Assembly (NCBI RefSeq): GCF_000143415.4
Contig: NW_003314263.1
Span: forward strand, 2,072,749-2,136,748
DNA from: Selaginella moellendorffii
Lineage: Eukaryota; Plantae; Lycopodiophyta
DNA length: 64,000 bases
Reading direction: 5' to 3'
The position numbers were made by a program, and so were the translations under genes. The first letter of the stretch is position 1, and each line of letters opens with the position of its first letter. Shown in pieces: positions 4,499-56,691 of this stretch. The notes beneath the pieces are model-generated. The model ran no database searches. It saw nothing but the letters and a program-made list of their open reading frames with translations, and was not told the origin of the DNA.

Positions 4499-6169
4499 AG
4501 TGTGTGTCAACTTAGAGCTTTTTCCTTAAAAAACTTGTAGCTTTTTTTTTTATATGCCGTGGGTTTCAGCAGGTTGTGTTCATCCAGGAAAATCTTACCC
4601 CAACCAAAGTGAAAGAGTGCCCTACTTTGGGTTTGACACTGAAAAACTTGGAAAGTTTGACTCTAGAACTTGTTTATAGAATATCTGATTTGATATTATG
4701 AAGATAATAAATAAGACTTAGGGTTTCCAGAGATAGTAAAATAGCTTTAATGATTACATAATTGCAGCTATAAAAATAAATAAAAATAAAAACTTAAAAG
4801 TAATCATATTAATATAATTAATAATTTAAATAAAAAATATTTAATATTTTTACAATATATATAGATATTTATTTATTTATACTTTTAAAATATCCAAAAT
4901 TGTTATGATGTTAATTTCATTTGTAATCAAATCTATCAGTGAGATGGTAAAACATTATTTTTCAAGAAGAAAATATATCCATAACCTTTCAAAAAATAAA
5001 GTTTACAATAAATAACTTTTATTTATTAATACATACCAAGAATAAGTTTATTTTAGGTCGTAGTTTGCCTTTCTCCCATAAGTGAGTTGCATGAAAACTC
5101 TCGGGATAAATACTCCGTAACTTCCAAAAACTTGGCACTTAAAGGATTCATTGGTAAACGCTTGCAATCCACGATTACTAGTTACCATTTGTGGAGTATG
5201 CATAACCTTGTTCACTTCAAACATTTTTCATTTTAATATTTTTTTTGAAATATTCAAAAAAAATTACCATTCTATGAGAGATAAAACATCTTTTGAAAGG
5301 TATAAAATCAATTAAATTTAAGGTATGGCAAATATATACATATTATATATAAATTCCACAAATAAATTTTATCCAATGCATTTTGGATGCATACTAATAT
5401 CTTTGCAACGTTTATGAATTTTTGATATGTAAGATCTTTTGCAGCTAAACTTTGTAAATAATACAACGTAAGGAACCAGTCAACAATAATTTTTAGCTGC
5501 ATAAATATATATACATTACATCAAATTCCACAAGTGAAATATTTTACCCTAGTAGAAATAATTATGTTTGTTGTACTAACTGTAAAAAACTATTAGTAAA
5601 ACATTAATGAGTTGTTATTTTTTGTAATAGTTTTTGTTTCCCACCAAAGATTAAAAGTGCAAATGCAATTAAAAAAATTAATATTTAAATAATTTTAAAA
5701 TTAATAAATATTTTTTATAAAGTTATGTATCATTTATTTTATCACTTTATTATAAGATATCATGGTTTACTATTCTAAAATTTTGATATTATGCTTGGTT
5801 AGCAAAGAAAGACATTATTTTAGATATGTGCTAATTCAATCTTTTATTTATAAATTTTTGTATAATATGTAATATATAATTTTTTTTCTTTTATTCATTT
5901 ATGATTAATTTATAAAAATAATAATTATTAATTTTTTAAATATATTAAAATAATAAATAAATAAATATTATTTAAATGTAATGGACATAATTTTCTTGTG
6001 TTTTTAACCAAAACTTATAATGAAATTAATCATGACACCTAACACACCCCTTCCTTTGCACATACTTGAGCCATGGCTCTTGAGCACTTGGACAAATGTT
6101 TTGCACTCATGCTGTAGCTTTTCTAACACCTTCTCAAGCAAGTCTTAGCATACTTCTGATTCACCAACG

Positions 6170-7943: not shown

Positions 7944-9508
7944 ATGCGATGGCCTGGCAGTGATCCGCGCTTTCGAATCGATCGACGCAGCAGCGCGAGC
8001 TCGAGAGCGAAGCTTTTTCTCGCGAGGAATGTGCCCCGGTGTTGGAGGATCGTAGCTCCAGAGAATCGCCCAATCCATCCACAGAAGCTCCGGACCCTCC
8101 GGACATTCCATCGGCGAGGCAAGGCGATCCGAGGCCAGCGCGCGATGATCGCCCAGCAGCATCAGCAGCAGGGAGAGAAGATGATCAAGAAGAGGAGGAA
8201 GAGGTACGGGGCCAAGTTCGCCATGCCTACTGGCTTCATTTACCGCAAGGTCTGGGACGTGGATCTTGATCCCATCCTCGCGGAGCCCAGCGCGCGACGG
8301 ATCCTGGCCACCCTGGGCCTGGACGAGTTCGCGGCGCAGCCCCTCCCGCCCCTCGATCGCTCCCTCTGCGACGAGTTCCTCAAAAATTTCGATCCTTGGA
8401 ACTCCAGCGCCATGGTCAGAGGTGAGCGCGTGGTGATCGATGCCGCCAGCGTCTCTGCGGCCACCAGGCTCCCGATCGGCGACGATGGCGGCGAGATCTC
8501 GACCTCGGCAGTGCTGACCAAGGAGGAGAGATCGGCCTTGGGCGCGATCGTGCTCGATCTCAAGGAGTACAGCTCTCGCGGCTACTCTGTGGATGCCCTT
8601 GTTCTTGGGGAGAATGTGGAGGCGTGGAAGGCGATTTGCATGATGCTTATGGTGAAGCTCGTCGCCCGCCGCGAGTGCTTCCATTGCGTGCCGGTGGAGG
8701 TCCTCCTCGCGCTGGATCGATCGTACAAGCTCGGTATCAAGATGCGATGGGCGGAGTACCTGGGAAAGATGATCGCCCGTGGCGCAAAGACGAGCTCCAG
8801 GAGGAAGAGCACGTTTGCTCACGGCGAGTGGCTCACTGGGATCATCAAGAACAAGCTCGGGCAGCAAGATCAAGGTCGCGTGGAAGAGAATCACAAGCTT
8901 GGGCAGCAAGATCGCGCGGAGAAGGAGAAGGAGCACGCGGGCGTCCTCACGGACAAGATGGTGATCGCCGAGGACGTCCACTCGAGCATCCAGCGCAAGC
9001 AGCAGTGTGATGCCAGCGTCCAGACGATGATCCAGGAGGAGAGTAGAGATCGTGTGATCATCGCCAGGCAGAGAGAAGACATTCGATTGCTCCGCAGTGA
9101 GGTCGAGAGGGGACGAGCGATGGTGGCGTCGCTGAGAGACAAGTATTTGAAGATCAAGCAGGAGGGTATCACTCCACCGCGCAAGAAGATAGCCGATCAT
9201 GATCAGAGGTAACTTGGAGTTCTTGCGAGGTTCCACGATCTTTGGAAGAACTGATTTTGTTTTCTCTTTTCTTTTGGGGTTTTGTCCTGACAGCATGGAT
9301 TCGGCTCCAGTGGCAGCGGCTGGCAGCAACAGGTAGGAGCAAAGATTTTGGCTCAAGTTCTTTATTCTTTCTCTTGTGTTCTTCTAGTTTTCGTGAAGAA
9401 TTGATTGCCCCGTTTGATGAGGATGTGGAAATGGAGGATGCGTTTCCTCCTCCGCTACCATCTTCGCCGCCGCCTCCTCTTCCATCCTCGCCGCCGCCCG
9501 ATCGCTAA
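7944..9508 (+). CDS. Unknown protein, 3 exons (7944-9208, 9294-9332, 9388-9508); core resembles a plant retrotransposon accessory-ORF domain, followed by a coiled coil and an acidic/Pro-rich tail
   Basis: A 422-aa ORF plus two phase-2 GT-AG introns keeps the frame to ...DEDVEMEDAFPPPLPSSPPPPLPSSPPPDR*. The motif pattern is LCDEFLKNF..AMVRGERVVIDAASVSAATRLP..WAEYLGKMI. The domain assignment is inference. Confidence 0.7.
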
Positions 9509-9599
9509 AGTATGATCAAGAGATTCCCTGCAATGCCCTCTCTGGGCATTTGCTGCTGCGAGGGATGGTGAGTGCGAATGTGGAGAGTTTGTCACCTTT

Positions 9600-9912
9600 T
9601 CGATTTTACCAGCATTTGCTGCCTCTGATGTCTGTGGATAGTTTCTTCCTTCCATTTTTTAGGGCTCTTGAGTATTTGGATATCTTAAAATCCCTCCTCT
9701 TGATCCCCAGCAGCCGCGGGTAATGTTCTCCAAACAGGAATTGGCTCACCGAAATCCGCCTCGTTCCCGTACGCCCCGGATCCATGCGTGACGCTCGATC
9801 CTGGTAGACCCACTGGACTCCATCTCCAGGTACGTTGCGTCTTCGATCGACGAGAGAATCCTCTCGGGAGGGAGGAAGCGGTGGTGGAATCTCACGCTCT
9901 TCATCTGGTGCG
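9600..9912 (-). pseudogene. Heavily deleted remnant of the FAD-oxidase gene and its 3' flank
   Basis: The reverse complement matches 16238-16350 (HQMKSMRFHHRFLPRG..YL..GVQW), 17310-17400 (GSGAYGNEADF..LFGEHY.RLL) and the 3' flank aatactcaagaaccctaaaa at ~17504. Confidence 0.85.
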
Positions 9913-10455: not shown

Positions 10456-11238
10456 ATGGTTGTAAGTGCTCTTATAAATTTTATTGGAATTGCACTTCCT
10501 TCAGGACAATATACACCAATAAACTCAACTCTGCCAATGTCTTATTTAATGGGAAATACATTAAGAAGAACAATGGATTTACGGATTTTTATTTTTACAA
10601 CTTTTGTAGACTGTGGTGTTAATTCTCAAGGTAAGGCACTAGTCAAAAATAATCAAGTAGTGAATGTACTTAGAAGAGCTGGTGCAGATATTCTTCCAAT
10701 AATTTTGACAAATAGCCCAGCCCATTTCTTAATGATTGTTTTTGATCCAGAGGTTGGAATATTTGGTTTATTATACAGTGTAAGAGGTTTCTTTCCAAAA
10801 TCTCCATCTAGTACTGCTGAAGTCTTAACAAAAATTCCCTTTTATTGCAACCCACTAAATACAAGGCTTATAAGTGGGTATAAAGATATGCCATTAGCAA
10901 CATTAAAAGTTGGAGAAGAATTAATTGATTATATAAAACGTTTTACAATAATAATGCAATATGATTGTAATATTGTATTTTATATTAGTGTTAATGCTTT
11001 TTGGAGTACAAAAACGTATGGGAAAAGTTTTTATTGTAAATTGAGATTGCAAGAAGATGGTAATCTTGTTTTATATGGTGCTTTTGATATAACTAATTAT
11101 TGGTCAAGTAAAAGTTACTGTAGAAAATATAATTGTGCTGTACTATCAGAATTTCATGTTCAAAAAGATTGTAATTTAGTCATTTATAGATATGGAAAGA
11201 AAAATATACTAACATGGTCAAATGGTAAAGTTTGTTAA
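10456..11238 (+). CDS. Bulb-type (GNA-related) mannose-binding lectin domain protein with an unknown N-terminal region
   Basis: Three intact QxDxNxVxY motifs: QYDCNIVFY, QEDGNLVLY and QKDCNLVIY. The frame is open back to 10381, just after TTTAG, so an upstream exon is possible. The ORF is markedly AT-rich. Confidence 0.75.
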   Translation: MVVSALINFIGIALPSGQYTPINSTLPMSYLMGNTLRRTMDLRIFIFTTFVDCGVNSQGKALVKNNQVVNVLRRAGADILPIILTNSPAHFLMIVFDPEVGIFGLLYSVRGFFPKSPSSTAEVLTKIPFYCNPLNTRLISGYKDMPLATLKVGEELIDYIKRFTIIMQYDCNIVFYISVNAFWSTKTYGKSFYCKLRLQEDGNLVLYGAFDITNYWSSKSYCRKYNCAVLSEFHVQKDCNLVIYRYGKKNILTWSNGKVC

Positions 11239-13406
11239 CCATAATTATAATATAGTATAATATAATTATTATATAATGATATTAAGCAATAGAGACTCAA
11301 ATTTGGATCACAGCCTCCAAAGTTTTCAAACCTCCAAGAAGCATCCCAAGTTTTTCCCCAAAGTTTTATATTGTTGACAATATTCACATGGACTCTTGAC
11401 ATGTAAAGTTATTGTTTTAAGTTTATCAGTATAGATAATTTATATATTACAATAATTTACTGTTCATTGCATGTAGCAACATTTGGTTTGTTTAATAGTA
11501 GTGTTATTCATATTTATTAATCTAATTGATTAACAAGTTTATAGTTATAAATATGTATATAATTTATAAATACAAGATTAGTCTACTAGAAAGTATTTAG
11601 GAAAATTTATAAATTATAAATACAAGTTTAATCTAAATAAATAACAGCTGTTAGATGGTAGATCCTAAAATATCCAAATATATTTCTTAAGCACACAAAA
11701 AAACATTAAATTTAATTAATAATAATTTTTTATACATAAAACTTATAAATATAAAAATCTTGTTTATATTTATGTTTAACTTATTTTGATTAGGGCACCA
11801 TGAACTTAGTGATGGAGTTTTCTTGTTTAAGCACATTTGTCAGATTCACCAGAATGGCAACCACTTAGATGGCCCATCCCATTTTCTTTGTTTCCCTTTC
11901 TTATATCGAGAGGAATTCAGGCACTATACTTTTTGGATCTTTGCGTGCTTAGGGGTGCACTGAGCTTTCCACTCACCACCACTGGCCTGAATTTCCTCTT
12001 GTTCCTTTGCAATGGTCATCCCATTCCCTTCGTCACTCTTTCGTTCCCCTACACCTTTCATACATATTTCTACACAAACAGGCCACTGGGCCTCATCGAA
12101 ATCCGCCTCGTTCCCATACGCCCCCGATCCAGGCGTGAGGTCGACCAGAATCGCATTCGCGGCGCTCAGCTCCGCCCTCGCTCGATCGTCTCCGTCACTC
12201 CAGCTGCTGCCGAGGATCACATCACATGCCACAGTACGCGGCGCCACGCGGGATTCACAGCATTGTCTCGACCGTCGCGGCTCACGGCGCCGCCCCCGAC
12301 GAACACGCCAGTGAGGGACACGCGCGGGAAGAGCTCCCGGATGCGCACCATCGCCTCCGCTAGATTCCCCGGCGAATATGCGACCGTTGTCCTGGGAATG
12401 CGCCGCGACGCCAGTGGAATCCCCGCGGTGGTGGCGGTGTCCACATCGCGGCAGCTCGATCGCCCCTGGCATTGGATCGCCAATCGAAACTCCTGGAACG
12501 AGGGGAAGGATTGGAGGCTCCCGCTGGATCGAAGCTGAGGATCCTCCCGCGCGAGCTCTTCCAACGGTGCCCCGAGCGTGGCGCTGGCGAGCTCCATCCC
12601 GCTGTTTGGGAGGAGATACGAGAGCGTGAGCTCGGTGGTGTTGGTGATCAAGAAGGTCCCCGCCCAGCCGGCGCGCTCGAGCGAGGGGTGGAGCTCGGTG
12701 AATTGAGCGAGCGTTCGCTGGAAGCTGGGCTTGTCCGGGGTTGAGAGGTTGTACTGCGCGAAGACGAGGCTGTCCAGCGCCGGGTAGAGCCAGTGCGTGG
12801 CCGCGATGCCAAACGTTCCGCCGCCGCCGCCGCCGCCGCGCATCGCCCAGTAGAGATGCTGGTTCTGGCAGCGATTGGCAACGGCGAGGCTTCCATCCGA
12901 GGTCACCACCGAGAACTCCAGGACGTTGTCCGCGGCCAGGCCGAAAGTTGGCGAGAGTGGGCTGCGCCCTCCGCCCTGGGGATGGCCTCCGGCAGCTCCC
13001 ACGGAGCTCGATCCACCGCCGACGAGCACGAACTTGCGATCAAACACCGCCTGGTAGAGCTCTTCCCACTTGACTCCAGCACCGACCGTCACTGCCGGGA
13101 GGTACGTTGCTCCTTTGGATCGATGAGAGCATCCACTCGGGAGGAAGCGGTGGTGAAATCTCATGCTTTTCATTTGGTGTGTCCGGATGCTCAGCGCTCC
13201 CGCGGCGGTGCTCCGCCCGAGGTAGGCGCAGGTTCCTGGCGGCCGCGAATCCCACCGTGGATTGACGCCGAGCCTTGCGAGCACGATGAGTTTCGAGGGG
13301 AGTCTATCGAGCAGCGATCGGTTGATCCCATTTGCCAGTTGCTAGCTTGCATGGCTCCCCTCCAGAATGGGAAGCTCCATCGCTGGCGTGCGTCTCGGCA
13401 GGCTCA
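10470..13406. repeat. Left arm of a large inverted duplication
   Basis: The reverse complement of 10470-12073 matches ~17830-19198, and that of 12074-13406 matches ~15932-17375. Confidence 0.9.
12074..13406 (-). pseudogene. Truncated and deleted copy of the FAD-linked oxidase
   Basis: Near-identical to 15932-17375 but lacks the signal peptide, the C-terminus and the VVKNTGHD segment. Several frameshifting deletions are present. Confidence 0.9.
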
Positions 13407-13499: not shown

Positions 13500-14300
13500 T
13501 AGTTTGTGGTGAAAATCCCTGTTGCTGCCAGGCCGAGAAAGCCTTCTGGCTCAATCTGAAGAGATCAAAATCGAGCTTTATGAGTCTGATTTTCACGATG
13601 CCAATATGTGACGAAGGTGAGGTTTTTCTTTTGGTAAAAGGCCACTGGCTGAGTTGCCGAACAAGGCGATATAGCGGGATCCGAGAGCTTGTTTGATCCT
13701 TACAGGACAATCCTGGGTGGATATTGGTCGGCATTGGAGATCAGGTGGATAGGAACAGCCTCGAGCTCTTCGAAACCACAAGTACGTCTTTTCTCGTTTC
13801 TTTCCTTGCTTTTCCTTGTAACTTGTCTGACAGATTGTTGTCCATGGCACACGAAGAAAACTTAGCTCTCTAGCGCAAGTCCTGCAAAAGGTAGATGGTG
13901 GATTTACGTTCTTCTTACAGGCCTCGTTCGTGATCGGTGGACAGGCTTTTACAGCGCTTGCTATTCAGTTCAAGCATAAAGCTCCTGCACATCGTGCTCA
14001 AAATCGTAAGAAACAAACCACTTGTTCTCGAGACTGAATTGTCTACTTGCACTACACGAAATCGAACTTACATTGGAACAAACGAGCTTTGCATCCATGA
14101 CAGCGTTTGCTCTCAGTTGTATGCTTTTGCATTCCAGATTTACAAACGCTTTGACTGTTTGCAGGTCAAGGTGTACACCACAGAAGTTCAGCAGCTGAAT
14201 TCTCCGCTCCACAACTACATCCGAGCATCAGTTGGACTCGGCATGATAAAGTCCTGATTCCGTGCTCTACACTCATGTGCAGGATTTACCTCCGGCTGTT
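13500..14300 (+). pseudogene. DUF547-family gene remnant with introns
   Basis: The peptides SESLFDPY..DIG..EIRWIG, QK|ASFVIGGQAFTALAIQ and VKVYTTEVQQ..HNYIRASVGL..KVLIP resemble DUF547 blocks. Stops and frameshifts are present. Confidence 0.6.
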
Positions 14301-14607
14301 ATCAGGGAAGTTCTTGAGCTTCAGGAATGTTTCAATTGTGGCATTTGGATTTTCGGTTCCAATACCTGTTTCTTGGAATGCAATAGTAAAACAGAAGTTC
14401 TTTAATATTCCAGGGTGATGGATCCTTATACTAATATCCTCCAACTCAACCTCTGAAGTTTTGATCTTTAGTCACTTCTACCATCCGACCAGTCTTGTTG
14501 TGTTGGTGTTGGCTTGCATAAGAATGTCATTATATGTATGCTAATTGGAATGAATTCGATGATATATCTGATGTAGATCATAAGAGACACAAATCTTATC
14601 CAACACT

Positions 14608-14771
14608 TTTTAGATACGTATTAGTCTCTTCATAATGTTTATTAGTTTTAGATACGTATTAGTCTTTTCATAATGTTTATTAATTTTATGTAGGATCTTC
14701 TAAAGCCAAATTATATTTTATAAATAACACAATACAAGGAATCAATTAATAATAATTTTTTAATTGCAAAA

Positions 14772-15720: not shown

Positions 15721-17496
15721 ATGAAAACAGCCACGGTACCTCTGCTCCTCATCGTGATCGTCGCATTCCATCTGGCTCAATCCTTCCGGCCTCCATGCCA
15801 ATGCACAGCCTTCGATCGCCACTGCTGGCCCGACTCTCAATCCTGGGCCACCTTCAACGCCTCCATCGATGGAAAGCTCATCCGCGTGGTTCCTCCGGCC
15901 TCTCCTTGCCACGATCCAGCTTTCAATCGGCGAGCCTGCCGAGAGGCACGCCAGCGATGGAGCTTCCCGTTCTGGAGGGCGGACCAGCCGGGAGCCATGC
16001 AAGCCAGCAACTGGGAATCAAACGGGATCACCGATCGCTGCTTGATAGACTCCCCTCGAAACTCATCGTGCTCGCAAGGCTCGGTGCCAATCTACGCAGT
16101 AGCAGCGAGAAAAGCCTCCCACATCCAAGCAGCGGTGGGATTCGCGGCCGCCAGGAACCTCCGCCTCGTCGTAAAGAACACCGGTCACGACTACCTCGGC
16201 CGGAGCACCGCCGCGGGAGCGCTGAGCATCTGGACACACCAAATGAAAAGCATGAGATTCCACCACCGCTTCCTCCCGAGAGGATGCTCTCGCCGATCGA
16301 AAGACGCAACGTACCTCCCGGCAGTGACGGTCGGAGCGGGAGTCCAGTGGGAAGAGCTCTACCAGGCGGTGTTTGATCGCAAGTTCGTGATCGTCGGCGG
16401 TGGATCGAGCTCGGTGGGAGCTGCCGGAGGCCATCCTCAGGGCGGAGGCCACAGCCCACTCTCGCCAACTTTCGGCCTGACCGCGGACAACGTCCTGGAG
16501 TTCTCGGTGGTGACCGCGGATGGAAGCCTCGTCGTTGCCAATCGCTGCCAGAACCAGGATCTCTACTGGGCGATGCGCGGCGGCGGCGGTGGAACGTTTG
16601 GCATCGCGGTCACCGCCACGCACAGGCTCTACCCGGCGCTGGACAGCCTCGTCTTCGCGCAGTACAACCTCTCAACCCCGGACAAGCCCAGCTTCCAGCG
16701 AACACTCGCTCGATTCACCGAGCTCCACCCCTCGCTCGAGCGCGCCGGCTGGGCGGGGACCTTCGCGATCACCAACACCACCGGGCTCACGCTCTCGTAT
16801 CTCCTCCCAAACCGCGGCATGGAGCTCGCCAACGCCACGCTCGCGGCACCGCTGGAAGAGCTCGCGCGCGAGGATCCCCAGCTCCGATCCAGCGGGAGCC
16901 TCCAATCCTTCCCCTCGTTCCAGGAGTTTCGATTGGCGATCCAATGCCAGGGGCGATCGAGCTGCCGCGATGTGGACACCGCCAACACCGGCATCGCCAC
17001 CGCGGGGATTCCACTGCTCCTGGCGTCGCGGCTCATTCCAAGGACAACGGTCGCATATTCGCCGGGGAATCTAGCCGAGGTGATGGTGCGCATCCGGGAG
17101 CTCTTCCCGCGCGTCTCCCTCACTGGCGTGTTCGTCGGGGGCGGCGCCGTGAGCCGCGACGATCGAGACAATGCTGTGAATCCCGCGTGGCGCCGCGCGC
17201 TGTGGCATGTGATCCTCGGTAGCAGCTGGAGCGACGGAGACGATCGAGCCGAGCAGCGCGCCAGGGCGGAGCTGAGCGCCGCGAATGCGATGCTCATCGA
17301 TCTCACGCCCGGATCGGGGGCGTATGGGAACGAGGCGGATTTCAATGAGCCCCAGTGGCAAGAATCCCTGTTTGGAGAACATTACACGAGGCTGCTGGCG
17401 ATCAAGAAGAGAGTCGATCCGGCGGGGATTTTCCGATGCTACCACTGCGTCGGGAGCGAGGAGTGGAGCGAGGATCTTCTATGCGCCACGCGATAG
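15721..17496 (+). CDS. Secreted FAD-linked oxidoreductase (VAO/BBE superfamily, fungal isoamyl-alcohol-oxidase/ZEB1-like type), intronless
   Basis: 591 aa with a signal peptide. Motifs include CWP..W..FN.SI.GKLI, CSQGSVP.YAV, NLRLVVKNTGHDYLGRS..GALSIWTH, GGGHSPLSPTFGL.ADNVLEF, DLYWAMRGGGGGTFG, and C-terminal GAYGNEADF..WQESLFGEHY.RLLAIKKRVDP. Confidence 0.92.
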   Translation: MKTATVPLLLIVIVAFHLAQSFRPPCQCTAFDRHCWPDSQSWATFNASIDGKLIRVVPPASPCHDPAFNRRACREARQRWSFPFWRADQPGAMQASNWESNGITDRCLIDSPRNSSCSQGSVPIYAVAARKASHIQAAVGFAAARNLRLVVKNTGHDYLGRSTAAGALSIWTHQMKSMRFHHRFLPRGCSRRSKDATYLPAVTVGAGVQWEELYQAVFDRKFVIVGGGSSSVGAAGGHPQGGGHSPLSPTFGLTADNVLEFSVVTADGSLVVANRCQNQDLYWAMRGGGGGTFGIAVTATHRLYPALDSLVFAQYNLSTPDKPSFQRTLARFTELHPSLERAGWAGTFAITNTTGLTLSYLLPNRGMELANATLAAPLEELAREDPQLRSSGSLQSFPSFQEFRLAIQCQGRSSCRDVDTANTGIATAGIPLLLASRLIPRTTVAYSPGNLAEVMVRIRELFPRVSLTGVFVGGGAVSRDDRDNAVNPAWRRALWHVILGSSWSDGDDRAEQRARAELSAANAMLIDLTPGSGAYGNEADFNEPQWQESLFGEHYTRLLAIKKRVDPAGIFRCYHCVGSEEWSEDLLCATR

Positions 17497-17584
17497 TCCT
17501 GTGAATACTCAAGAACCCTAAAAAGGGGGTTCTTAATTGTTGGTAAAAATCCAATAAAAGGAGGGGTAAAAACTCCACATTGAT

Positions 17585-17781
17585 TGATTGAACCAAAATC
17601 TTTGCTCCTACCTTTTGCTGCCACCCGCTGCCACTGGAGGCGAATCCATGCTGTCAGGAAGAAACCCAAGAAAAAAAGAGACCAGTTCTTCCAAAGATCG
17701 TGGAACTCACAAAGAACCTCGCAAGAACTCCAAGTTCGTGATCGGCTATCTCATTTTCGGCCCTCGCATTTTCTCTCGCGA
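17585..17781 (-). pseudogene. Remnant third copy of the unknown gene with almost all of exon 1 deleted
   Basis: The reverse complement reads gcgagagaaaatgcga.ggcc (= 7932-7954) joined to agatagccgatca (= ~9187), then intron 1 and exon 2 (= 9210-9355). Confidence 0.85.
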
Positions 17782-18442
17782 TATTGTGGTAAAGGAAGAA
17801 TAGGCTGATGGAGGAGTTGGGGTCGTTGAAGTAGAAAAATGTATGAAAAGTGTAAAGGAATGATGAGGAAAGAGTGACGAAGGGAATGGAGTGACCATTG
17901 CAAAGGAACAAGAGGAAATTCAGCCCAGTGGAGGTCACACAACTCCCAGTGCACCCCAAGATCCAGAAAGAATAGTGCTTATAAGTTTAATTAGGCTGAT
18001 GGGATCTACCATTTAACAGTTGTTATTTATTTAGATTAAACTTGTATTTATAATTTATAAGCTTTCCTAAATTAGTATATTTTAGTTTATTCTACCATTT
18101 AATGGTTGATATGCAATAAGATTAATCCTGAGTATATAAATTATATACATGTTTGTAGCTTTAAACTTGCATTTGATCAATTAAATTAATAAAAATAACA
18201 CTACTATTAAGAAAACCAAATGTTGCTACATACAATGCACAGCAAATTATTGTTTAATATTTAAATTATCTATGCTGATAAATATATAATAATAAGTCAA
18301 GATTCCATGTGAATATTGTCAACAATATACACTGTTTCTTATTCTTGTATCAAAGGTTGAAAGTTTGAACATATATGAATCAGTCTAGAATATATTTATA
18401 ATATTAAATTTGTTTAATAGTACTTATATTATACTATTATGG

Positions 18443-19198
18443 TTAACAAACTTTACCATTTGACCATGTTAGTATATTTGGATTTCCATCTCTATAAATG
18501 ACTAAATTACAATCTTTCTGAACATGAAATTCTGATAGTACAGCACAATTATATTTTCTACAGTAACTTTTACTTGACCAATAATTAATTATATCGAAAG
18601 CACCATATAAAACAAGATTCCCATCTTCTTGCAATTTCAATTTACAATCAAAAATTTTCCCATACTTTTTTGTACTCCAAAAAGCATTAACACTATTATA
18701 TGATATAATATTACAATCATATTGCATTATTATTGTAAAACGTTTTATATAATCAATTAATTCTTCTCCAACTTTTAGTGTTGCTAATAGCATATCTTTA
18801 TACCCACTTATAAGCCTTGTATTTAGTGGGTTGCAATAAAAGGGAATTTTTGTTAAAACTTCAGCAGTATTAGATGGAGATTTTGGAAAGAAACCTTTTA
18901 CACTGTATAATAAACCAAATATTCCAACATCTGGATAAAAAAAAATCATTAAATAATATGCTGAGTCAAAATTATTGGAAGAATATCTGCACCAGCTCTT
19001 CTAAGTACATTCACTACTTGATTATTTTCGACTAGTGCCTTACCTTGAGAGTTAACACTGCAGTCTACAAAAGTTGTAAAAATAAAAATATGTAAATCAA
19101 TTGTTCTTCTTAATGCATTTCCCATTAAGACATTGGCAGAGTTGAGTTTATTGGTGTATATTGTCCTAAAGGAAGTGCAATTCCAATAAAATTTATAG
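18443..19198 (-). pseudogene. Frameshifted, 5'-truncated copy of the bulb-type lectin gene
   Basis: Highly similar to 10470-11238. A 5-nt deletion near 19125 creates a stop, and there are further indels near 18945-18965. The lectin domain itself is still open. Confidence 0.8.
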
Positions 19199-19561
19199 TC
19201 AATGTCCTCAACACTAAAACCCTAAATCCTGCTTTACACTGCTTTCCAGTCAATGATATTTGGGCAATGATATTGTGTTTGCAGTTGCACACACAAACCT
19301 CAAACACAGCCCATGGAATGTTTATATATAATGAAGTTGTTTTGGGGGCTATTGTGATATTTGCTAACTATTTTAGATCTTTAAAGTTATGACCGTCTTA
19401 AATTTAAATTTTGTTGTTAAGATCATTACCAGAACTTCCCAATTACACTCGTTTAAGCTATTCCTCTTGGCATTGTCCTTTCAATTGTGGCATGGTGGGT
19501 TAGCTGCGAAGAAAACGTTATTTGTAGTTCCAGGAAGAAGGCAAGAGTTACCGCTTGGATA

Positions 19562-20642
19562 TTACACGCACTTCTTATGCTTGATAAGCCATGCTCGGAT
19601 CGTCCTGTACCATCCGTATTGTATGAAGAGCGAGATGATTCGCGTGACCGGAAGGAAGACAATCTCTGCAAGAGTGTAGCAAACAGACATGTGTGGGGAC
19701 ATGCCTGTGCAAAGGATGGCGAGAAGATGGCCATCAAAGTTGCAAGAAACGTTGAACCTCCCTGCTCTGATCCCGTCCATGGCTTTTCTTGCGACGTCGA
19801 TCGCCACCATTGCACTGGAGGACTCAGACAAGATCTTTGTTATCTCCGGTTTGAACTTGTTCTCTGCATGTTTAACACACGAGAAGAGGAGAAAAAGAGG
19901 AAGCGAAAAGGCATACCTTCTCGGAGTCCGGGAGTGTCTGTGTCAGGAGGATAGATGACCGAAATCTGGATCTTCCGGAGGAAGAGCTCTTGTTTGAGGC
20001 TCTCCGCGAATTTTACCAGCGCAACCTTTGCTCCCGAGTAGCATGCGAATCCATAAATTCCAGCCTACGAAAGAAGAAGACCGTGATAGAAGACCAACAG
20101 AAAAGAAGTACCTGGGCTGCTTGAGAAGAGAAGATCGCAATGCTGCGAGGATACACCCCGCCATCTCTCACCATCCCTGGCAACGCGGCCTTGATCACAT
20201 TCATCGTCCCCATGAAATTAATCCCCACCACCGTGTCGAGATCCTCGTCTCTGGCATCCTCAAACGCGCAAGGAATAGAAATCCCGTGGCTGCAAACCAG
20301 CACATCCACATCCCCAGCCTCAACCATTGCCCTCCGCAGCCCTGCTCGATCCAAAACATCGGCACTGACAAATCCCACCTCCGTGTCACTAGATCCACTC
20401 ACAGCCGCCGCGACCGCATCCCTGGCCTCTTTCAACCTCTCGACATTCCGCGCCAAGAGCGTCACCTTGCGCGCGCCATGCGCAGCGGCAATCTTCGCGA
20501 GCTCAAGCCCGATCCCGCTCGATCCACCAGAAATAAGAATGTGCCTGCCACGGATCTCCACCGGAGACGACGGCACCTTGAGAACCCACAGAGCGAGCAG
20601 CACGATCGGGAGCAGCAGCAAGATCGCTAGAACGAACACCAT
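19562..20642 (-). CDS. TSC10: 3-dehydrosphinganine (3-ketosphinganine) reductase, SDR family, multi-exon
   Basis: N-terminal TM segment, RHILISGGSSGIGLELA, DVLVCSHG, SSQAAQ, FPPEDPD/DTDTPG and RFNVSCNFDG..LCTGMSP. Confidence 0.88.
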
Positions 20643-20973: not shown

Positions 20974-23900
20974 TTAGATCGTCGCGTGAGCAGCAGCGCC
21001 ACGCCTCTCTGGAAGGGAAATCTCGAGACGCATTAGCTCTCTCTTAAACTTTAGAGCAAACAAAGCTAGAACAAGAGAGAAAGCTTGGTTCGTACCTCCA
21101 GCAGCCACGAGCTTTTCCACCCGCGCAACGATGTGCTTGCCATAAGTGTACTTTTTTAGAGCGTGGAGGTGGACTTTGATACGACCCAGGAGCATCTCTC
21201 GTTGCTGGTCACTGCAAGTCTCCAAAACCTTTTGCACCACGTAGTTTGCAAACTGGTCCTTCATCATCGCCTGCGTGGAGTGGAGCCGAGCGTGAGCAAA
21301 ACGAAAAAAACTCTCTTTTGCTGTTCATCTCTTTACCTGTAATGGCGCGTTCTCGTCCGTGGTGCCAAGCATCTCATCCACCAAAATTTGCCGCTCCGCC
21401 GGCCCCCCAAACTCTAGGCACTTCTCCACTACATTCGAAGCGAACTTGTGCTGGCTCATCTGTACAATCTGCCCGGCCAGCTTAGTTATTATCTCGCTCC
21501 TCTCATGGGGTTTCCCATGTTCCAAAACGTGCTGCACAAAATTTACAACAAACAATCAAAAACAGAATCCGCAATAAAGCCACCTTGGATTTACCTGAAT
21601 AACGTAATTCCCATACTGATCCTGCGCTAGACTGCAGGTGGCGCCCAGGATTTCTTCCATGATTCCTGCCTGTTTCTGATCGTCTGTACAGTGCTCCAGA
21701 ACTCTCTGCACCAACGTAAAAGATTTCACTCCAATGATTAACTCCCACAGCAGTCTTTTCGTAAGTTACCTGAATCACCCGGCATCCATACGGATGAGTC
21801 GAGAGGACGAGTACTTGACCATAGAACGCGGATATGATAAACTGTATTTTGTCCGGCGGGACACATTCAATACATTTCTGAATGACATGATTCCCGTTTT
21901 GGTCTCGCACACATCGCATGACATGCCCATCCAGTTCTACTACGAGTTGAGTTTGTTGGTCCACATCACAGACCTCCAATGCCTACACAAACATATAGCA
22001 AGCTCTTTGTCTGTCTACAACTTCAAAGAGAAACAATGCATACCTTTTGTATGACACGACAGCCATACATCTGCAAGCTCAGCTCCAACATATGACCAAC
22101 GAGTAAATTTGCGAGCTCTCTGCGCTGCTGAGAGTTACCGTGTTCAAAAAACTGCACAAGGACGGACATGTAAGATCCTTCAGTTCTTACGTGCGACATA
22201 AAAACCATACCTTCTGGATCACATAGTTTCCGAAAACATCTGTCATGAGTGTAAACGCCTGAGGCAGAACCTCGTCAAAGACCATGGCTTTCTCCTCCGC
22301 AGTCGCGGCCTCCAGCTTTTGCTGAATGAAACGGCTACCGTGTTGATCGGCACTGTTAAAGAAGATCCTCAGTTTCTCTCAGCAACAAAAACTCCACTTT
22401 AAATACCTGAATTCCACAACGTGTCCCACAATGTCGGAGAGCTCGAACCGGCGGCTTTTACTGCTCTTAAACTCTTCCAAAAGTACAGATCCTCTGATGT
22501 CATCACCAAGATCACTTCCACGCTGCCAGCCATAATTTAGACCCGATCGCAGAGACGCCAGTGCCTCGCGATGAAGAACGCTTGATGAAGCCGAGGTCGA
22601 GCCGAGTGACGAGTAATACGGTGGAACAGTCCGCCCCCCATAGTACAAAGGATTCGGCTTCAGTGAGCTAGAAGAAGCACTCCTACCAAAATGATGCTTG
22701 TGATCCCCAATGTATCCCAGGTCGGAAGATTCAGACTGCAAATAATTGCGCAAAGCAACTTCGTCCGCAGCACGTTGCAGATACTGCAGATATAGAGCCT
22801 CCTGAAGCGAGCTCGACGAAACCCCGCCATCAACTTGCTGCTGCTGCTGCTGCTGCTGCTGAGCATATTTGTACAATTGCTGCCTGTCGATCCCACCAGA
22901 GGCACCTGCCAGTGCCGACCGTGCACTGAGCCTCGCTGCTGCGTTGTCGAACAAAGCGTTTGGAGACGAGTACGTGCCTCCCATAAGTGGAGTCGACTGA
23001 TAACCACTTAAACCATACTGTTGTTGGCCGTAAACGGACTGCAAGTTCTGGTAGTAAGGATTTCCAGCAGCTATATACGACATGGCTGCGGCGGCGGCGG
23101 CGGCGGCAAACGCGTTGGAGTTCGAACTTCCAGGCTGAAGAGGCGGCGCCGTTCCGGCCTCGTTGGTAAGGCCAAACTGCTGCATCTGATCCTCGAGAAA
23201 TTCCGTGTACGTTTGTGACGAAGGCTGCTGTACAGGTGCACGCTGAGAGCGTCGCTGATGCTGATGCTGCTGCTGGCGATATCGCATTTGACTGTGTTGG
23301 TCTCCTCCCTTGTCACGCTGGGACTGCTGCTGCTGTACAGTGTCGAAATTAGTTGACTCTTGCATGCTCAAGCCTTGCAGTGCTGCGCCAAGGTCGATCG
23401 CGTTCGAGCTTCCGGATCTTTTTACAGCGTTCCCCATGCCTATACTTCCTAGTTGGTCCCCGGAGACGGTCGGCTCAGCAGACGGGCTACGTTTCGGGGG
23501 AAACGGACTATGACGGCCACTTGACTCTGGAACCACTTGAGAGGAATCCAAGTGCGACATCTCCTGCAAATGCATTAGTTGCATCTCTACGTTGGACATG
23601 TTGGACGAGCTATCCTCTTTGCCATCGTGGTTGTAACTGTACACAGGTGATGGTGTTCGAGGAAAATCTTGCTGCCAAAAAAGTCCACCGATCAAAATTT
23701 GAAAACAGGAAACTCAACAAACACACTTACCTGAATGAGATCGACTAAGCTTCTGCCATGGGCTCCAAACCCATGGCCCAAAGCTCCCTCTAGCGCTGCC
23801 TTGTGCTGCTCTGGGTCGTCCTCAACATGTTCCAACGAGTCCTCGGGCATTATTGGCTGCGACGCGAACAAGGACCTGCTATTGTTGTCGTCGAAAGATC

Positions 23901-24345
23901 TCAGCTTCCAGTTGCTATCTTTGTTTCCACCGGCGAGGCGCTGAGCCAGCCTCAAGTTGTCCCACGAGATAATCGGTGGTGGCAGCCTGGGATTCAAGTT
24001 TATGTGCGAGTTGTAGTACGCAAGGTAGGCAGGATCCGAGCGCAATTGCTCCTCGCTCTCGTAGCTTTCTTCCCTCTCGGCCAGTCCCTTGGAAATCCTT
24101 CCGGGGCCAAAGCTGCTCGGATCCAGTAACCCACTGACCGCCGCCAAGGACCCCTCCACACTCGGCGGAGCACTCTCACTCCTGTGCATGAGAACGTCGC
24201 CATTCACCATGCTCTCGTAGCGCGATCGCTCCTTGAGCAGCATGGAGAGCTCTGAGTCGAGTGACGGAGCCGGGGCCCCGGAGGTGCGAATGCCATTACT
24301 CAAGCTTCCTCCTGGCATCAGTCTCACCGGGCTCTCAGTAGCCAT
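20974..24345 (-). CDS. APUM: Pumilio/PUF RNA-binding protein (APUM1-6 type), multi-exon
   Basis: MATESP start, [33 protein letters not shown] and [21 protein letters not shown] repeats include [41 protein letters not shown] and [10 protein letters not shown]. Confidence 0.95.
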
Positions 24346-28041: not shown

Positions 28042-28410
28042 GCAAAATTCTCGTCAGTTTCCACGAGTTTAGCAAGATCTATGAATAAGGAGCAAGAGAC
28101 AACCATTAGAACACAAGGGAAAAAAAAGAGGACGACGAAGAACCTGGTTTGCGTGTGTTCTATTTAGTGATCGCAGCTTCGTGACCCACAACTCTCGTCG
28201 ATTTCCACGACTCCAGCAAGATCTATGAATGAAGAGCGAGAGACAACCATTAGAAAACAAGGAGAAAAACGAGGACGACGAAGAACCTGGTTTCTATCAG
28301 CTTCGTGATACAAAATTCTCGTCAGTTTCCACGACTCCAGCAAGATCTAAGAATGAAGAACCATTAGAACACAAGGAATAAAAAGAGGACGACGAGGAAC
28401 CTGGTTTGCT
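28042..28410. repeat. Three diverged tandem copies (~110-130 bp) spanning the PPR stop codon region
   Basis: Recurring tctcgtc..tttccacga..agcaagatcta..accattagaa.acaagg..gaggacgacga.gaacctggttt. Confidence 0.9.
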
Positions 28411-53716: not shown

Positions 53717-53979
53717 TAGCATATGTGGTTTTCACCTTTTATCCTATAGTGATTTACCATAGGATAACCACAAAGCGAAACCTAAACTCTCTATATGCCA
53801 CATGTTATATACCATATGCCACATGCCACATGTCCAAAGGATAATAGAGCAAAACCCAAGCTTCAAGGCCTTGGGCCATTGAATGAAGGAACGGAGCTAA
53901 ACTTCTAAGCGTAGAGCCAAAGAGCAAAGAAATTGAAGTATAGAGCAACTCCTAAGTGTACAGCCCAAAGAGTTAAGGG

Positions 53980-56107: not shown

Positions 56108-56691
56108 AAGGGATAGAGCAACTTGGAATAGTCCTAGAGCATCTAATATCCCAATACTAAGACCAACATGCAAAACGGAACCAAATGGAGTTCAGCACTA
56201 TTTTAACATACCAATGGTCTAATGCAAGAATATGGGTACTCCACCAATTAGCATGGTATGGAACTTGGGTTTAAACCCAAACCGGATACAGAACAAAAAC
56301 AAATACACAAGTGGGAGCTAGATTATACCTTAAGTTGGCCATAGACATCAAACAAAGCAATAGACGTTCGTCCAACTTGAGAGAAAAGCTGGAGAAGCAT
56401 CTCAGTGCCACCCCAATGGATATAGCATTTAGGTCACGCTAGGTCACGGTTAATGAACTTTGGCTTTGTGAAATTGCTACCTGTGTCCATGCATGTAGAG
56501 GTAATGCCTTCTGCTGTTTGGCTCTAATAGGCTGGACGAGACGAATTCGGAGGATGAGTTCATTGCCAACCTTTAGGATACTGTTTAGTGGCTTAGAGGT
56601 ACCTCTTTCTTGCCACCTCTTTCTCTATTGTTACCTTACCATGGATTTTTACTTCAAAGAGAGTAATCCTTTCCACATAAACATACCCTCA

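What the first reader, a model, noticed from the sequence alone, without database searches (positions are those of the whole stretch)
15721..17496. Fungal-type secreted FAD oxidase in a plant chromosome: horizontal-transfer candidate
Seen: an intronless gene among intron-rich plant genes. Established: typical plant BBE-like enzymes have RSGGHDYEG. The VKNTGHDYLGRS..GALSIWTH motif, the N-terminal CWP..W..LN and C.QG.VP are hallmarks of fungal isoamyl alcohol oxidase/ZEB1-like secondary-metabolism oxidases. Inference: acquisition from fungi, or ancient retention, followed by local amplification. The substrate is unknown. Fungal-like FAD oxidases in non-seed plants may already have been reported.
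Basis: partly seen in the sequence, partly recalled or inferred. Interest (0 to 1): 0.7.

Follow-up and report, generated by a model that had tools for sequence, protein, structure and literature searches.

The report
Fungal-type flavin oxidase gene in Selaginella
An intact, intron-free gene in the spikemoss Selaginella encodes a secreted flavin oxidase of a type centred on fungi; its family is shared with ferns and most likely entered early vascular plants from a zygomycete-like fungus, but this copy was not detectably transcribed and its substrate is unknown.

Summary
Window 15721-17496 (+) is one uninterrupted 591-codon ORF with FAD_binding_4 and BBE domains. It sits in Selaginella moellendorffii scaffold GL377567.1 between ordinary plant genes.

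Its closest solved relatives are the Myceliophthora oxidases MtVAO615 and MtVAO713, by sequence and by predicted fold. Canonical plant BBE-like enzymes are far more distant.

About 17 Selaginella relatives were listed (a few are alleles, fragments or rival gene models), on ten or so scaffolds, and ferns also carry the family. In bacteria-rooted trees these plant sequences fall inside a clade of zygomycete fungi and bdelloid rotifers. Moss homologues sit elsewhere, with chytrids and tardigrades. A single clade of all plants is rejected (AU p = 5e-54). Selaginella plus ferns as one clade is not rejected (p = 0.46).

The best reading is an old fungus-to-vascular-plant transfer followed by family expansion. 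Locally, an inverted duplication left one frameshifted pseudogene that lacks the FAD-linking histidine, plus a smaller relic.

Predicted chemistry is a secreted oxidase with FAD linked only through His156, which produces H2O2. No transcripts of this copy were seen.

A fungal origin was already published for a Physcomitrium gene with the same domains. This scan has flagged two other copies in this genome. This is therefore a new member of a known kind.

The parts
15721..17496 (+). Intact single-exon coding sequence of the 591-aa fungal-type FAD-linked oxidase (identical to P0001; GL377567.1, about 2,088,469-2,090,244)
   Evidence: ORF listing; Pfam FAD_binding_4 + BBE; exact match in the public S. 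moellendorffii assembly; AlphaFold2 model with pLDDT 94
15721..15780 (+). Predicted N-terminal secretion signal, residues 1 to about 20 (MKTATVPLLLIVIVAFHLAQ)
   Evidence: Mean Kyte-Doolittle hydropathy is 2.73 over residues 6-17. This is the only low-confidence helix at the N-terminus of the model. MtVAO615/713 have 26-residue secretion signals (PMC6017366). No dedicated signal-peptide predictor was run.
16090..16536 (+). FAD_binding_4 (PCMH-type) domain, residues 124-272
   Evidence: Pfam PF01565, E 2.9e-18
16186..16188 (+). Codon of His156, the predicted 8-alpha-N1-histidyl FAD attachment site (equivalent to His157 of MtVAO615)
   Evidence: HMMER alignment to 6f72 read against the residue numbering in PMC6017366. 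The residue is invariant in 115 aligned homologues, including bacteria.
17320..17439 (+). BBE C-terminal domain, residues 534-573, containing the invariant Y535-x-N537-E538
   Evidence: Pfam PF08031, E 2.6e-10. Glu538 aligns with Glu519 of MtVAO615.
12082..13405 (-). Inverted pseudogene copy of the oxidase (public gene model P0006, 401 aa, starts at the equivalent of M175)
   Evidence: tblastn splits it over three reading frames. The DNA alignment shows loss of the first ~210 nt, 4-nt, 38-nt and 26-nt deletions, 1-nt and 5-nt insertions, and loss of the 3' end. The 26-nt deletion removes the VVKNTGHD codons, including His156. The core is 95.5% identical at nucleotide level, with dN/dS 0.36 and dS 0.089.
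9187..9910 (-). Relic of a third oxidase copy; only short fragments remain
   Evidence: tblastn fragments matching residues 170-206 and 528-564. blastn fragments are 78-88% identical to 16237-16316, 17296-17411 and 17588-17751.
10473..13405 (.). Left arm of an inverted segmental duplication. The right arm is 15932-19197. Each arm carries an oxidase copy plus a lectin-like ORF.
   Evidence: Self-blastn: 10473-11665 matches 19197-18002 (84.6%), 11921-12073 matches 17978-17831, and 12082-13405 matches 17359-15932 (86.7%)
13598..14723 (+). Small spliced plant gene in the spacer between the two inverted arms (annotated product 175 aa, no Pfam family)
   Evidence: Gene call in the public assembly. 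RNA reads and a Logan contig join across GT..AG introns at 13889-13942 and 14006-14164.

Best explanation
Window 15721-17496 is a genuine nuclear gene of Selaginella moellendorffii. It encodes a secreted, probably N-glycosylated flavoprotein oxidase of the VAO/PCMH superfamily. Within that superfamily it belongs to the MtVAO615/MtVAO713 branch, which also holds fungal ecdysteroid-22-oxidase and isoamyl-alcohol-oxidase-like enzymes.

Inferred mechanism:
- FAD is attached covalently through His156 only. The second (cysteinyl) attachment position is Ser229, as in MtVAO713.
- A substrate C-H next to a hydroxyl is oxidised by hydride transfer to the flavin.
- The reduced flavin is re-oxidised by O2, producing H2O2. 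The small 'gatekeeper' residue Val232 is compatible with this.
- Glu538 occupies the position where most BBE-like oxidases carry the catalytic tyrosine.
- By analogy with characterised relatives, the substrate is most likely a bulky, hydrophobic secondary alcohol. It is not known.

Inferred evolution:
- The gene is one member of a Selaginella family (about 17 listed relatives, some of them alleles, fragments or rival gene models) that is shared with ferns.
- The family descends from a transfer out of a zygomycete-grade fungus (Mucoromycota / Mortierellomycota-like) into an early vascular plant, and was later lost or never fixed in seed plants.
- Mosses obtained their related genes separately.
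- At this locus a recent inverted duplication produced a second copy that has decayed to a pseudogene, and an older one that survives as fragments.
For: Identity:
- Pfam finds FAD_binding_4 and BBE.
- PDB sequence search gives MtVAO615 at 1.6e-82 and MtVAO713 at 8e-69, against about 1e-18 for plant BBE-likes.
- The AlphaFold2 model has pLDDT 94. Foldseek TM-scores are 0.84-0.90 to 6f72/6f74 and about 0.62 to PpBBE1 and EcBBE.
- Residues were mapped from the alignment and the published structures (PMC6017366). H156, V232, H244, R491, Y535, N537 and E538 match the conserved set of the eukaryotic branch.

Plant residency:
- The sequence is identical in the 4.46-Mb scaffold GL377567.1.
- It is flanked by a short-chain dehydrogenase, a PUF/NABP gene, a CAAD gene, a PPR-E gene, a DEAD-box helicase and a UGT.
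- The adjacent gene is spliced in RNA reads.
- Relatives lie on ten or so scaffolds. One of them carries a ~53-nt intron.
- Fern homologues sit on chromosome-scale assemblies.

Phylogeny:
- IQ-TREE LG+G4, 115 rows, rooted on 20 bacterial sequences (100/100).
- Selaginella and ferns fall in a 96/98 clade with Umbelopsis, Calcarisporiella, Basidiobolus, Mortierellomycota and bdelloid rotifers. Its sister is Ascomycota plus chytrids.
- The same clade has 97% SH-aLRT under LG+C20+F+G4.
- AU tests: all plants as one clade rejected, p 5e-54. Selaginella plus ferns as one clade not rejected, p 0.46. Excluding the plants from that fungal group costs 34 lnL units, p 0.037.
- No seed plant, alga, liverwort or hornwort appears in the top 120 hits of searches seeded with Selaginella, fern and moss proteins.

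Local history.
Against: - No transcript of this copy was detected. In about 12% samples of three 10.8-Gb RNA-seq runs, the only reads on the gene were partial matches carrying paralogue-specific differences. Two exact 151-nt Logan contigs come from a run whose RNA status is only a guess. This particular copy may therefore be silent, condition-specific, or on its way to decay.
- Relationships inside the zygomycete + plant + rotifer clade are unresolved, so no donor lineage can be named.
- The AU test for nesting is only marginal (p 0.037), and the group was defined after the tree had been seen.
- Absence from seed plants and algae rests on three capped, word-seeded top-120 lists, not on an exhaustive named search.
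- GC3 (0.76) is somewhat above that of neighbouring genes (0.54-0.66). This is uninformative about the age of the gene.
- Substrate and physiological role are inferred by analogy only. MtVAO615 has no known substrate, and MtVAO713 has only a very poor one.
Confidence: 0.72

Rival explanations
1. Ancient vertical inheritance. The gene was present in the common ancestor of plants and opisthokonts (or in early Archaeplastida). It was retained in non-seed land plants and fungi and lost almost everywhere else.
For: The family is old and broad: all fungal phyla sampled, and about 260 bacterial loci. Selaginella plus ferns can be one clade. Ferns nest among Selaginella paralogues, which implies presence before the lycophyte-euphyllophyte split.
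Against: Plants are not monophyletic (AU p 5e-54). Vascular-plant sequences nest inside a fungal subclade, and moss sequences inside another one with chytrids and tardigrades. No alga or seed plant appeared in three searches. The scenario needs at least two ancient paralogues and very many independent losses.
Confidence: 0.1
2. The direction is reversed. The family arose or diversified in early vascular plants and was passed to zygomycete fungi (and rotifers).
For: Inside the 52-row clade the branching between plants, Umbelopsis, and Calcarisporiella/Mortierella/rotifers is unresolved. Plant-to-Mucoromycota transfers have been proposed for other genes (bioRxiv 10.1101/2021.12.02.471044).
Against: With bacteria as outgroup, every successive outgroup of that clade is fungal: Ascomycota plus chytrids, then Basidiomycota and chytrids. 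The eukaryote-branch signatures C107/C117, H244 and R491 are shared by all fungal phyla. A fungal ancestor is therefore the parsimonious state.
Confidence: 0.07
3. This copy is a silent recent duplicate, an incipient pseudogene. It says little about function; only other family members are active.
For: No reads specific to this copy were found in three RNA-seq runs. It lies in a duplication-prone block whose two other oxidase copies are dead. A ~97% identical copy exists on the same scaffold.
Against: The 591-codon ORF is intact, and every invariant residue of the family is kept. dN/dS against the dead copy is 0.36, not about 1. Only about 12% of three libraries of unknown tissue or condition was read.
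Confidence: 0.2
4. Contamination or assembly chimera. A fungal fragment was mis-joined into a plant scaffold.
For: Fungal-like sequence, intronless, with a GC content higher than its AT-rich flanks.
Against: GC-rich genes set in AT-rich spacers are the pattern across the whole window. Plant genes lie within 1-2 kb on both sides on a 4.46-Mb scaffold. A spliced plant gene sits between the two inverted copies. Relatives are dispersed over ten or so scaffolds next to RLK, La and rhomboid genes. One paralogue has a Selaginella-sized intron. The nearest fungal protein is only 46-47% identical.
Confidence: 0.01

Closest known systems
MtVAO615 (PDB 6F72) of Myceliophthora thermophila
   Same: Best sequence match (E 1.6e-82, about 31% identity in the structural alignment, TM 0.84/0.90). 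Same length class, secretion signal and N-terminal Cys-rich extension. Shares the flavin-linking His (157/156), gatekeeper Val (225/232), His237/244, and Glu519/538 in place of the usual catalytic Tyr.
   Different: MtVAO615 is bicovalent (Cys222), whereas the Selaginella protein has Ser229. Asp451 of MtVAO615 aligns with Gly473. No substrate is known for MtVAO615.
MtVAO713 (PDB 6F74, 'alcohol oxidase') and its close fungal relatives: ecdysteroid-22-oxidase of Metarhizium (Nomuraea) rileyi and the Hypomyces hypothemycin-cluster alcohol oxidase
   Same: Top Foldseek hit (TM 0.85/0.87). Monocovalent histidyl-FAD with Ser at the cysteine position. Glu replaces the catalytic Tyr. These are bona fide O2-reactive oxidases acting on bulky secondary alcohols.
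   Different: Only about 28% identical. The pocket residues were not compared in detail. The activities (ricinoleic acid, ecdysteroids, polyketide alcohols) cannot be transferred to the plant enzyme.
Physcomitrium patens FAD_binding_4+BBE gene reported as fungus-derived (XP_001770677.1; Li et al. 2018, PMC5982333); Toplak et al. 2018 describe a P. patens BBE-like 'gene #2' (PMC6001459); not shown here to be one and the same gene
   Same: Same domain pair and same fungal-type family. Li et al. interpret their gene as a fungus-to-plant transfer. Toplak et al. note that gene #2 is closer to fungal ecdysteroid-22-oxidase than to plant BBE.
   Different: The moss genes are 35-38% identical to the Selaginella and fern proteins. 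They form a separate 100/100 clade with Spizellomycetales chytrids and tardigrades. A single plant clade is rejected. The 2018 paper stated that there were no conserved homologues in other plants. I could not match the old accession to P0188 or P0192.
Canonical plant BBE-like enzymes (EcBBE, AtBBE-like 15, PpBBE1, THCA synthase)
   Same: Same superfamily, same two Pfam domains, secreted flavoprotein oxidases with a covalent histidyl-FAD.
   Different: Sequence E-values are only about 1e-18 and TM about 0.62. The GHD motif context differs (KNTGHDYLG here). They lack the ~100 extra residues, including the Cys-rich N-terminal extension. They use a catalytic Tyr where this protein has Glu538.

Membership tests
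VAO/PCMH flavoprotein superfamily, BBE-like group | FAD_binding_4 (PF01565) domain followed by a C-terminal BBE (PF08031) domain | tested here: met
   PF01565 at residues 124-272, 66.4 bits against a cut-off of 26.4. PF08031 at residues 534-573, 40.6 bits against a cut-off of 20.6.
VAO/PCMH flavoprotein superfamily, BBE-like group | Two-domain VAO fold | tested here: met
   AlphaFold2 pLDDT 94, pTM 0.91. At least 316 PDB chains match at E <= 0.001, and all the top matches listed are VAO/BBE-type.
VAO/PCMH flavoprotein superfamily, BBE-like group | Histidine for 8-alpha covalent flavinylation in the G-H-D motif | tested here: met
   His156 aligns with His157 of MtVAO615. It is invariant in 115 homologues. 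Covalent attachment itself cannot be tested with these tools.
MtVAO615/713-type oxidases (fungal isoamyl-alcohol-oxidase / ecdysteroid-22-oxidase-like branch) | Full-length similarity, including the extra ~100 residues relative to other VAO proteins | tested here: met
   phmmer E 1.6e-82 and 8e-69, covering residues 20-585. TM 0.84-0.90.
MtVAO615/713-type oxidases (fungal isoamyl-alcohol-oxidase / ecdysteroid-22-oxidase-like branch) | Glu in place of the catalytic Tyr of other BBE-like oxidases (Glu519/Glu543) | tested here: met
   Glu538, invariant across the family
MtVAO615/713-type oxidases (fungal isoamyl-alcohol-oxidase / ecdysteroid-22-oxidase-like branch) | Small re-side gatekeeper residue that permits O2 reactivity (Val225/Pro234) | tested here: met
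   Val232 aligns with Val225. Oxygen reactivity itself was not tested.
MtVAO615/713-type oxidases (fungal isoamyl-alcohol-oxidase / ecdysteroid-22-oxidase-like branch) | Signatures of the eukaryotic branch that are absent from the bacterial homologues: C107, C117-x-x-G120, H244, R491 | tested here: met
   All are present in the query and in essentially all fungal, plant and animal rows. C107/C117 and H244 are replaced in all 20 bacterial rows and R491 in 18 of 20.
MtVAO615/713-type oxidases (fungal isoamyl-alcohol-oxidase / ecdysteroid-22-oxidase-like branch) | Secretion signal | tested here: inconclusive
   There is a hydrophobic N-terminal segment (KD 2.73 over residues 6-17) followed by the Cys-rich mature start, and five N-x-S/T sequons. 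No dedicated signal-peptide predictor was available.
MtVAO615/713-type oxidases (fungal isoamyl-alcohol-oxidase / ecdysteroid-22-oxidase-like branch) | Alcohol oxidase activity producing H2O2 | not testable with these tools
   Needs purified protein.
Canonical plant BBE-like enzymes | Close sequence and fold relationship to EcBBE / AtBBE-like / PpBBE1, with bicovalent His + Cys FAD | tested here: not met
   E about 1e-18 and TM about 0.62. The cysteine position is Ser229.
Horizontally acquired plant gene (fungal donor) | Recipient sequences nested within donor diversity with support, on a rooted tree | tested here: met
   96/98 clade with zygomycete fungi under LG+G4. 97% SH-aLRT under LG+C20. 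Rooted on bacteria. The AU test for excluding the plants gives p 0.037, which is marginal and post hoc.
Horizontally acquired plant gene (fungal donor) | Absence from the recipient's other relatives (algae, seed plants, other bryophytes) | tested here: inconclusive
   None appears among the top 120 hits of three searches. These lists are capped and word-seeded, so no exhaustive named search was made.
Horizontally acquired plant gene (fungal donor) | Physical integration in the host genome | tested here: met
   Plant neighbours on a 4.46-Mb scaffold and a spliced adjacent gene. Dispersed relatives, one with an intron.
Horizontally acquired plant gene (fungal donor) | Expression in the host | tested here: not met
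   No copy-specific RNA reads in the sampled parts of three RNA-seq runs. This is weak negative evidence and applies to this copy only.

The most novel reading that the evidence does not exclude
One fungal secreted oxidase family has been captured independently several times by organisms of the soil and moss-cushion habitat. Early vascular plants (lycophytes plus ferns) and bdelloid rotifers took it from zygomycete-grade fungi. Mosses and tardigrades took it from chytrid-grade fungi. In Selaginella it then expanded into a family that alternates between predicted bicovalent (Cys) and monocovalent (Ser/Ala/Gly) flavin attachment. That pattern would point to a recurrently useful extracellular oxidation, such as detoxification or defence through H2O2, rather than a neutral passenger gene.
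Probability: 0.4. Interest if true: 0.65.

Novelty: new member of a known kind. Interest (0 to 1): 0.45.

Why it matters
Well-supported fungus-to-plant gene transfers are few. This one would date to the base of vascular plants, it would have founded a sizeable gene family in Selaginella, and it would add ferns to the recipients. It also shows that the published moss case is a separate event, not part of the same history. The enzyme class (MtVAO615/713-type) has almost no known substrates, so plant members offer a fresh route to finding its chemistry. The public name of these proteins already points to a fungal protein, a moss case is published, and this particular copy shows no expression. The finding therefore refines existing knowledge; it does not overturn anything.

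Tried and rejected
- **RNA evidence.** One search for runs and one read-laying gave no copy-specific transcripts. Reads at 15979-16376 are partial, with loose ends and fixed differences, so they come from paralogues.
- **Site-heterogeneous trees.** LG+C20 on all 115 rows did not finish. The 'careful' version on 65 rows did not finish either. Only the quick C20 tree is used.
- **Locating P0002.** The look-up of encoding contigs for P0002, the ~97% identical copy, found nothing on record. Its position is inferred only from an earlier scan note.
- **Naming the Logan and metagenome proteins.** The listing of cluster members returned no organism names. 'Fern-like' and 'moss-like' rows are labelled by tree position only.
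- **Literature.** Richards et al. 2009 (Plant Cell), which lists fungus-to-lycophyte transfers, is not held. I could not check whether this family is among them. A 2025 Plant Cell review does not mention FAD or BBE oxidases. PMC7730656 and the early-diverging-fungi HGT paper do not treat this family.
- **Contamination and vertical inheritance** were considered and rejected (see the rival explanations).
- **GC and GC3 comparison** is not informative about origin.
- **The exhaustive representative search** was not run. It returns no names, and the taxonomic question needs names.
Full report
**Observation**

Window 15721-17496 (+) is a single 591-codon ORF from ATG to stop. Pfam finds FAD_binding_4 at residues 124-272 and the BBE domain at 534-573, both far above their cut-offs.

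**Genomic setting**

- The annotated neighbours are ordinary plant genes:
  - a short-chain dehydrogenase (window 19500-20642, minus strand)
  - a PUF/NABP Pumilio gene (20974-24345, minus strand)
  - a CAAD-domain gene
  - a PPR-E gene (28297-29859, minus strand)
  - a DEAD-box helicase (29924-31600)
  - a UDP-glycosyltransferase
- GC-rich genes in AT-rich spacers are the pattern of the whole window.
- The PPR and helicase genes are also long single ORFs, so being intronless is not exceptional here.
- RNA reads splice a small gene at 13598-14723 across two GT..AG introns of 54 and 159 nt. This anchors the region in an expressed plant genome.

**Local amplification**

- A self-comparison shows an inverted segmental duplication. 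The arm 10473-13405 is the reverse complement of 15932-19197. Each arm carries an oxidase copy and a weakly B_lectin-like ORF.
- The left-arm oxidase (12082-13405, minus strand) is 95.5% identical in its core, but it is dead:
  - it has lost the first ~210 nt and the 3' end
  - it carries several frameshifting indels
  - a 26-nt deletion removes the codons for VVKNTGHD, including the flavin-linking histidine
- dN/dS between the intact and dead copies is 0.36, with dS 0.089.
- A third copy survives only as fragments at 9187-9910.
- A ~97% identical full-length copy (P0002) lies elsewhere on the same scaffold. Its public gene model splices out 55 residues. It probably corresponds to an earlier scan note placed 1.7 Mb upstream.

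**What the protein is**

- Sequence search of the PDB puts MtVAO615 (6f72, E 1.6e-82) and MtVAO713 (6f74, 8e-69) far ahead of all else. Canonical plant BBE-like enzymes score about 1e-18.
- An AlphaFold2 model built on a 57-sequence alignment has mean pLDDT 94. Foldseek ranks 6f74 and 6f72 first (TM 0.84-0.90), against about 0.62 for PpBBE1 or EcBBE.
- I read the HMMER alignment against the published structures (PMC6017366) and obtained this mapping:

| Query residue | MtVAO615 equivalent | Role or comment |
|---|---|---|
| His156 | His157 | 8-alpha-N1-histidyl FAD attachment |
| Ser229 | Cys222 | Second (cysteinyl) attachment position; MtVAO713 has Ser231, so monocovalent FAD is predicted |
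| Val232 | Val225 | Gatekeeper residue, compatible with O2 reactivity |
| His244 | His237 | Active-site residue |
| Glu538 | Glu519 | Replaces the catalytic Tyr of other BBE-like oxidases |
| Gly473 | Asp451 | Differs from MtVAO615 |

- In a 115-sequence alignment H156, Y535 and E538 are invariant and V232 and N537 nearly so; H244 and R491 are near-invariant in the eukaryotic rows only. The query keeps all of them.
- The N-terminus is a hydrophobic signal-like segment. There are five N-glycosylation sequons and 14 cysteines. This fits a secreted glycoprotein like the Myceliophthora enzymes.
- Known activities in this branch are oxidations of bulky secondary alcohols:
  - MtVAO713 acts weakly on ricinoleic acid
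  - fungal ecdysteroid-22-oxidase
  - the hypothemycin-cluster alcohol oxidase
  - MtVAO615 has no known substrate
- The substrate of the plant enzyme is therefore inferred only as a class.

**Are the motifs fungal hallmarks?**

Partly. A scan of one genome per bacterial or archaeal species found 260 loci encoding full-length relatives at 30-36% identity. They come from Mycobacteria, Myxococcota, Alphaproteobacteria, Acidimicrobiia and others. These share the GHD histidine motif, W36/P37 and W42. All 20 sampled have Cys at position 229. They lack C107, C117/G120 (the C.QG.VP motif) and H244, and 18 of 20 lack R491. Those four features mark every fungal, plant and animal member.

**Taxonomic spread**

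- Searches seeded with the Selaginella protein, a fern protein and a moss protein each listed 120 best hits.
- Plants in those lists:
  - about 17 Selaginella relatives on ten or so scaffolds (a few are alleles, fragments or rival gene models)
  - ferns (Adiantum, Ceratopteris) at 43-47% identity
  - mosses (Ceratodon, Physcomitrium) at 35-38% identity
- Everything else is fungal (all phyla; Calcarisporiella is top at 45-47%), bdelloid rotifer, tardigrade or unnamed metagenome.
- No seed plant, alga, liverwort or hornwort appears. These lists are capped and word-seeded, so this is not proof of absence.

**Phylogeny**

- A FastTree of 267 rows gave the first picture.
- An IQ-TREE LG+G4 tree of 115 rows followed, with 1000 ultrafast bootstraps and SH-aLRT, including 20 bacterial proteins translated from the fetched loci.
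- Rows left out were fragmentary or mis-predicted models (P0002, P0006, P0009, P0121, P0209, P0211, P0213), sequences under 450 aa, and, for the 115-row set, redundant fungal and rotifer rows.
- Results:
  - Bacteria form one clade (100/100) and serve as the root.
  - Selaginella and ferns lie in a 96/98 clade with Umbelopsis, Calcarisporiella, Basidiobolus, Mortierellomycota and bdelloid rotifers.
  - The sister of that clade is Ascomycota plus chytrids (93/77).
  - Basidiomycota and other chytrids lie further out.
  - Mosses are in a separate 100/100 clade with tardigrades and Spizellomycetales chytrids.
- A quick LG+C20+F+G4 tree on 65 rows recovers the same two clades, at 97% and 99% SH-aLRT.
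- AU tests:

| Constraint | Result |
|---|---|
| All plants held as one clade | Loses 196 lnL units, p 5e-54 (rejected) |
| Selaginella plus ferns as one clade | Loses 0.7 lnL units, p 0.46 (not rejected) |
| Fungi and rotifers of that region held together, plants excluded | Loses 34 lnL units, p 0.037 (marginal; group chosen after seeing the tree) |

- Ferns nest beside two Selaginella paralogues (84/97). This suggests that duplication had begun before lycophytes and euphyllophytes split.
- Gene structures fit long residence in plants:
  - Selaginella P0013 and Adiantum P0027 are intronless
  - Selaginella P0003 has one intron of about 53 nt
  - Physcomitrium P0188 has about 280 nt of intron

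**Interpretation**

- The most economical history is one transfer from a zygomycete-grade fungus into an early vascular plant.
- Expansion in lycophytes and ferns followed, with loss or non-fixation in seed plants.
- Mosses acquired their genes separately from a chytrid-like source.
- Rotifers and tardigrades look like further recipients.
- Vertical retention needs non-monophyletic plants to be explained by ancient paralogy plus massive loss.
- The reverse direction is contradicted by the fungal outgroups.
- Contamination is excluded by linkage, dispersion and introns.

**Expression**

In roughly 12% samples of three 10.8-Gb RNA-seq runs of the same species label, reads on the oxidase are few. 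All of them are partial, with loose ends and fixed differences at 16338 and 16353, so they come from paralogues. Two exact 151-nt contigs (16496-16646 and 16713-16863) come from a run whose RNA status is only guessed. Transcription of this copy is therefore not shown.

**Prior knowledge**

- Li et al. 2018 (PMC5982333) listed a Physcomitrium FAD_binding_4+BBE protein as fungus-derived and stated that it had no conserved homologues in other plants.
- Toplak et al. 2018 (PMC6001459) noted that P. patens BBE-like 'gene #2' is closer to fungal ecdysteroid-22-oxidase than to plant BBE.
- NCBI names the Selaginella proteins after the Arthroderma protein ARB_02478.
- I found no paper describing the Selaginella/fern clade. 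Richards et al. 2009 could not be read.
- This scan had already flagged two other copies in this genome with the same reading. My trees, run independently here, agree. They add the bacterial root, the separate origin of the moss genes, the local pseudogenes and the lack of expression.

**Verdict**

This is a real plant gene of a fungal-type oxidase family, with a well but not conclusively supported ancient fungal origin. It is a new member of a known kind and of moderate interest.

Noticed in passing
window 10456-11238 (+) and 18443-18949 (-): Each arm of the inverted duplication also carries an ORF with only weak similarity to bulb-type (B_lectin) mannose-binding lectins (E 0.05 and 0.006, below the Pfam cut-off). 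The right-arm one is an annotated 116-aa gene.
   Followed up: partly
window 2983-4504 and 7960-9514: A direct repeat of about 1.5 kb at 82% identity. It carries long ORFs on both strands with no Pfam family (318-484 aa; annotated as a 407-aa gene at 8145-9508). It may be an uncharacterised repeat or a lineage-specific gene.
   Followed up: partly
L003 (JGI metagenome contig Ga0620617_000216), proteins P0277, P0214, P0222: A metagenome clade of this oxidase sits on the eukaryotic side of the tree (100/100). Its 80-kb contig looks bacterial, with dense genes and a 7819-aa neighbour. This could be a fungus-to-bacterium transfer or an unrecognised lineage.
   Followed up: partly
Proteins P0203-P0217 (Paramacrobiotus, Hypsibius), P0204/P0207 (Spizellomycetales), P0143/P0188/P0192/P0199 (mosses): Tardigrade, chytrid and moss oxidases form one 100/100 clade, separate from the Selaginella/fern clade. 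Tardigrades carry at least eight copies. Moss-dwelling animals and mosses therefore share the same chytrid-like source lineage.
   Followed up: partly
Alignment position 229 across Selaginella paralogues: Among 14 Selaginella paralogues the cysteinyl-FAD position is Cys in 5, Ser in 5, Gly in 2, and Pro and Ala in 1 each. All 20 bacterial homologues have Cys. The family appears to switch repeatedly between bicovalent and monocovalent flavin attachment.
   Followed up: partly
Protein P0002 (SELMODRAFT_230086), same scaffold: The public gene model of a ~97% identical copy removes 55 residues (361-426 of the query) as an intron. The homologous stretch is coding in the window's gene, so that model is probably mis-spliced.
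   Followed up: partly
Protein P0023 (Selaginella, 717 aa): This paralogue's model carries an extra PF03083 (MtN3/SWEET) domain. This is most likely a fusion of neighbouring genes in the annotation.
   Followed up: no
window 53975-56112: An earlier scan note describes a retroelement insertion with two different LTRs here. It is unrelated to this finding.
   Followed up: no
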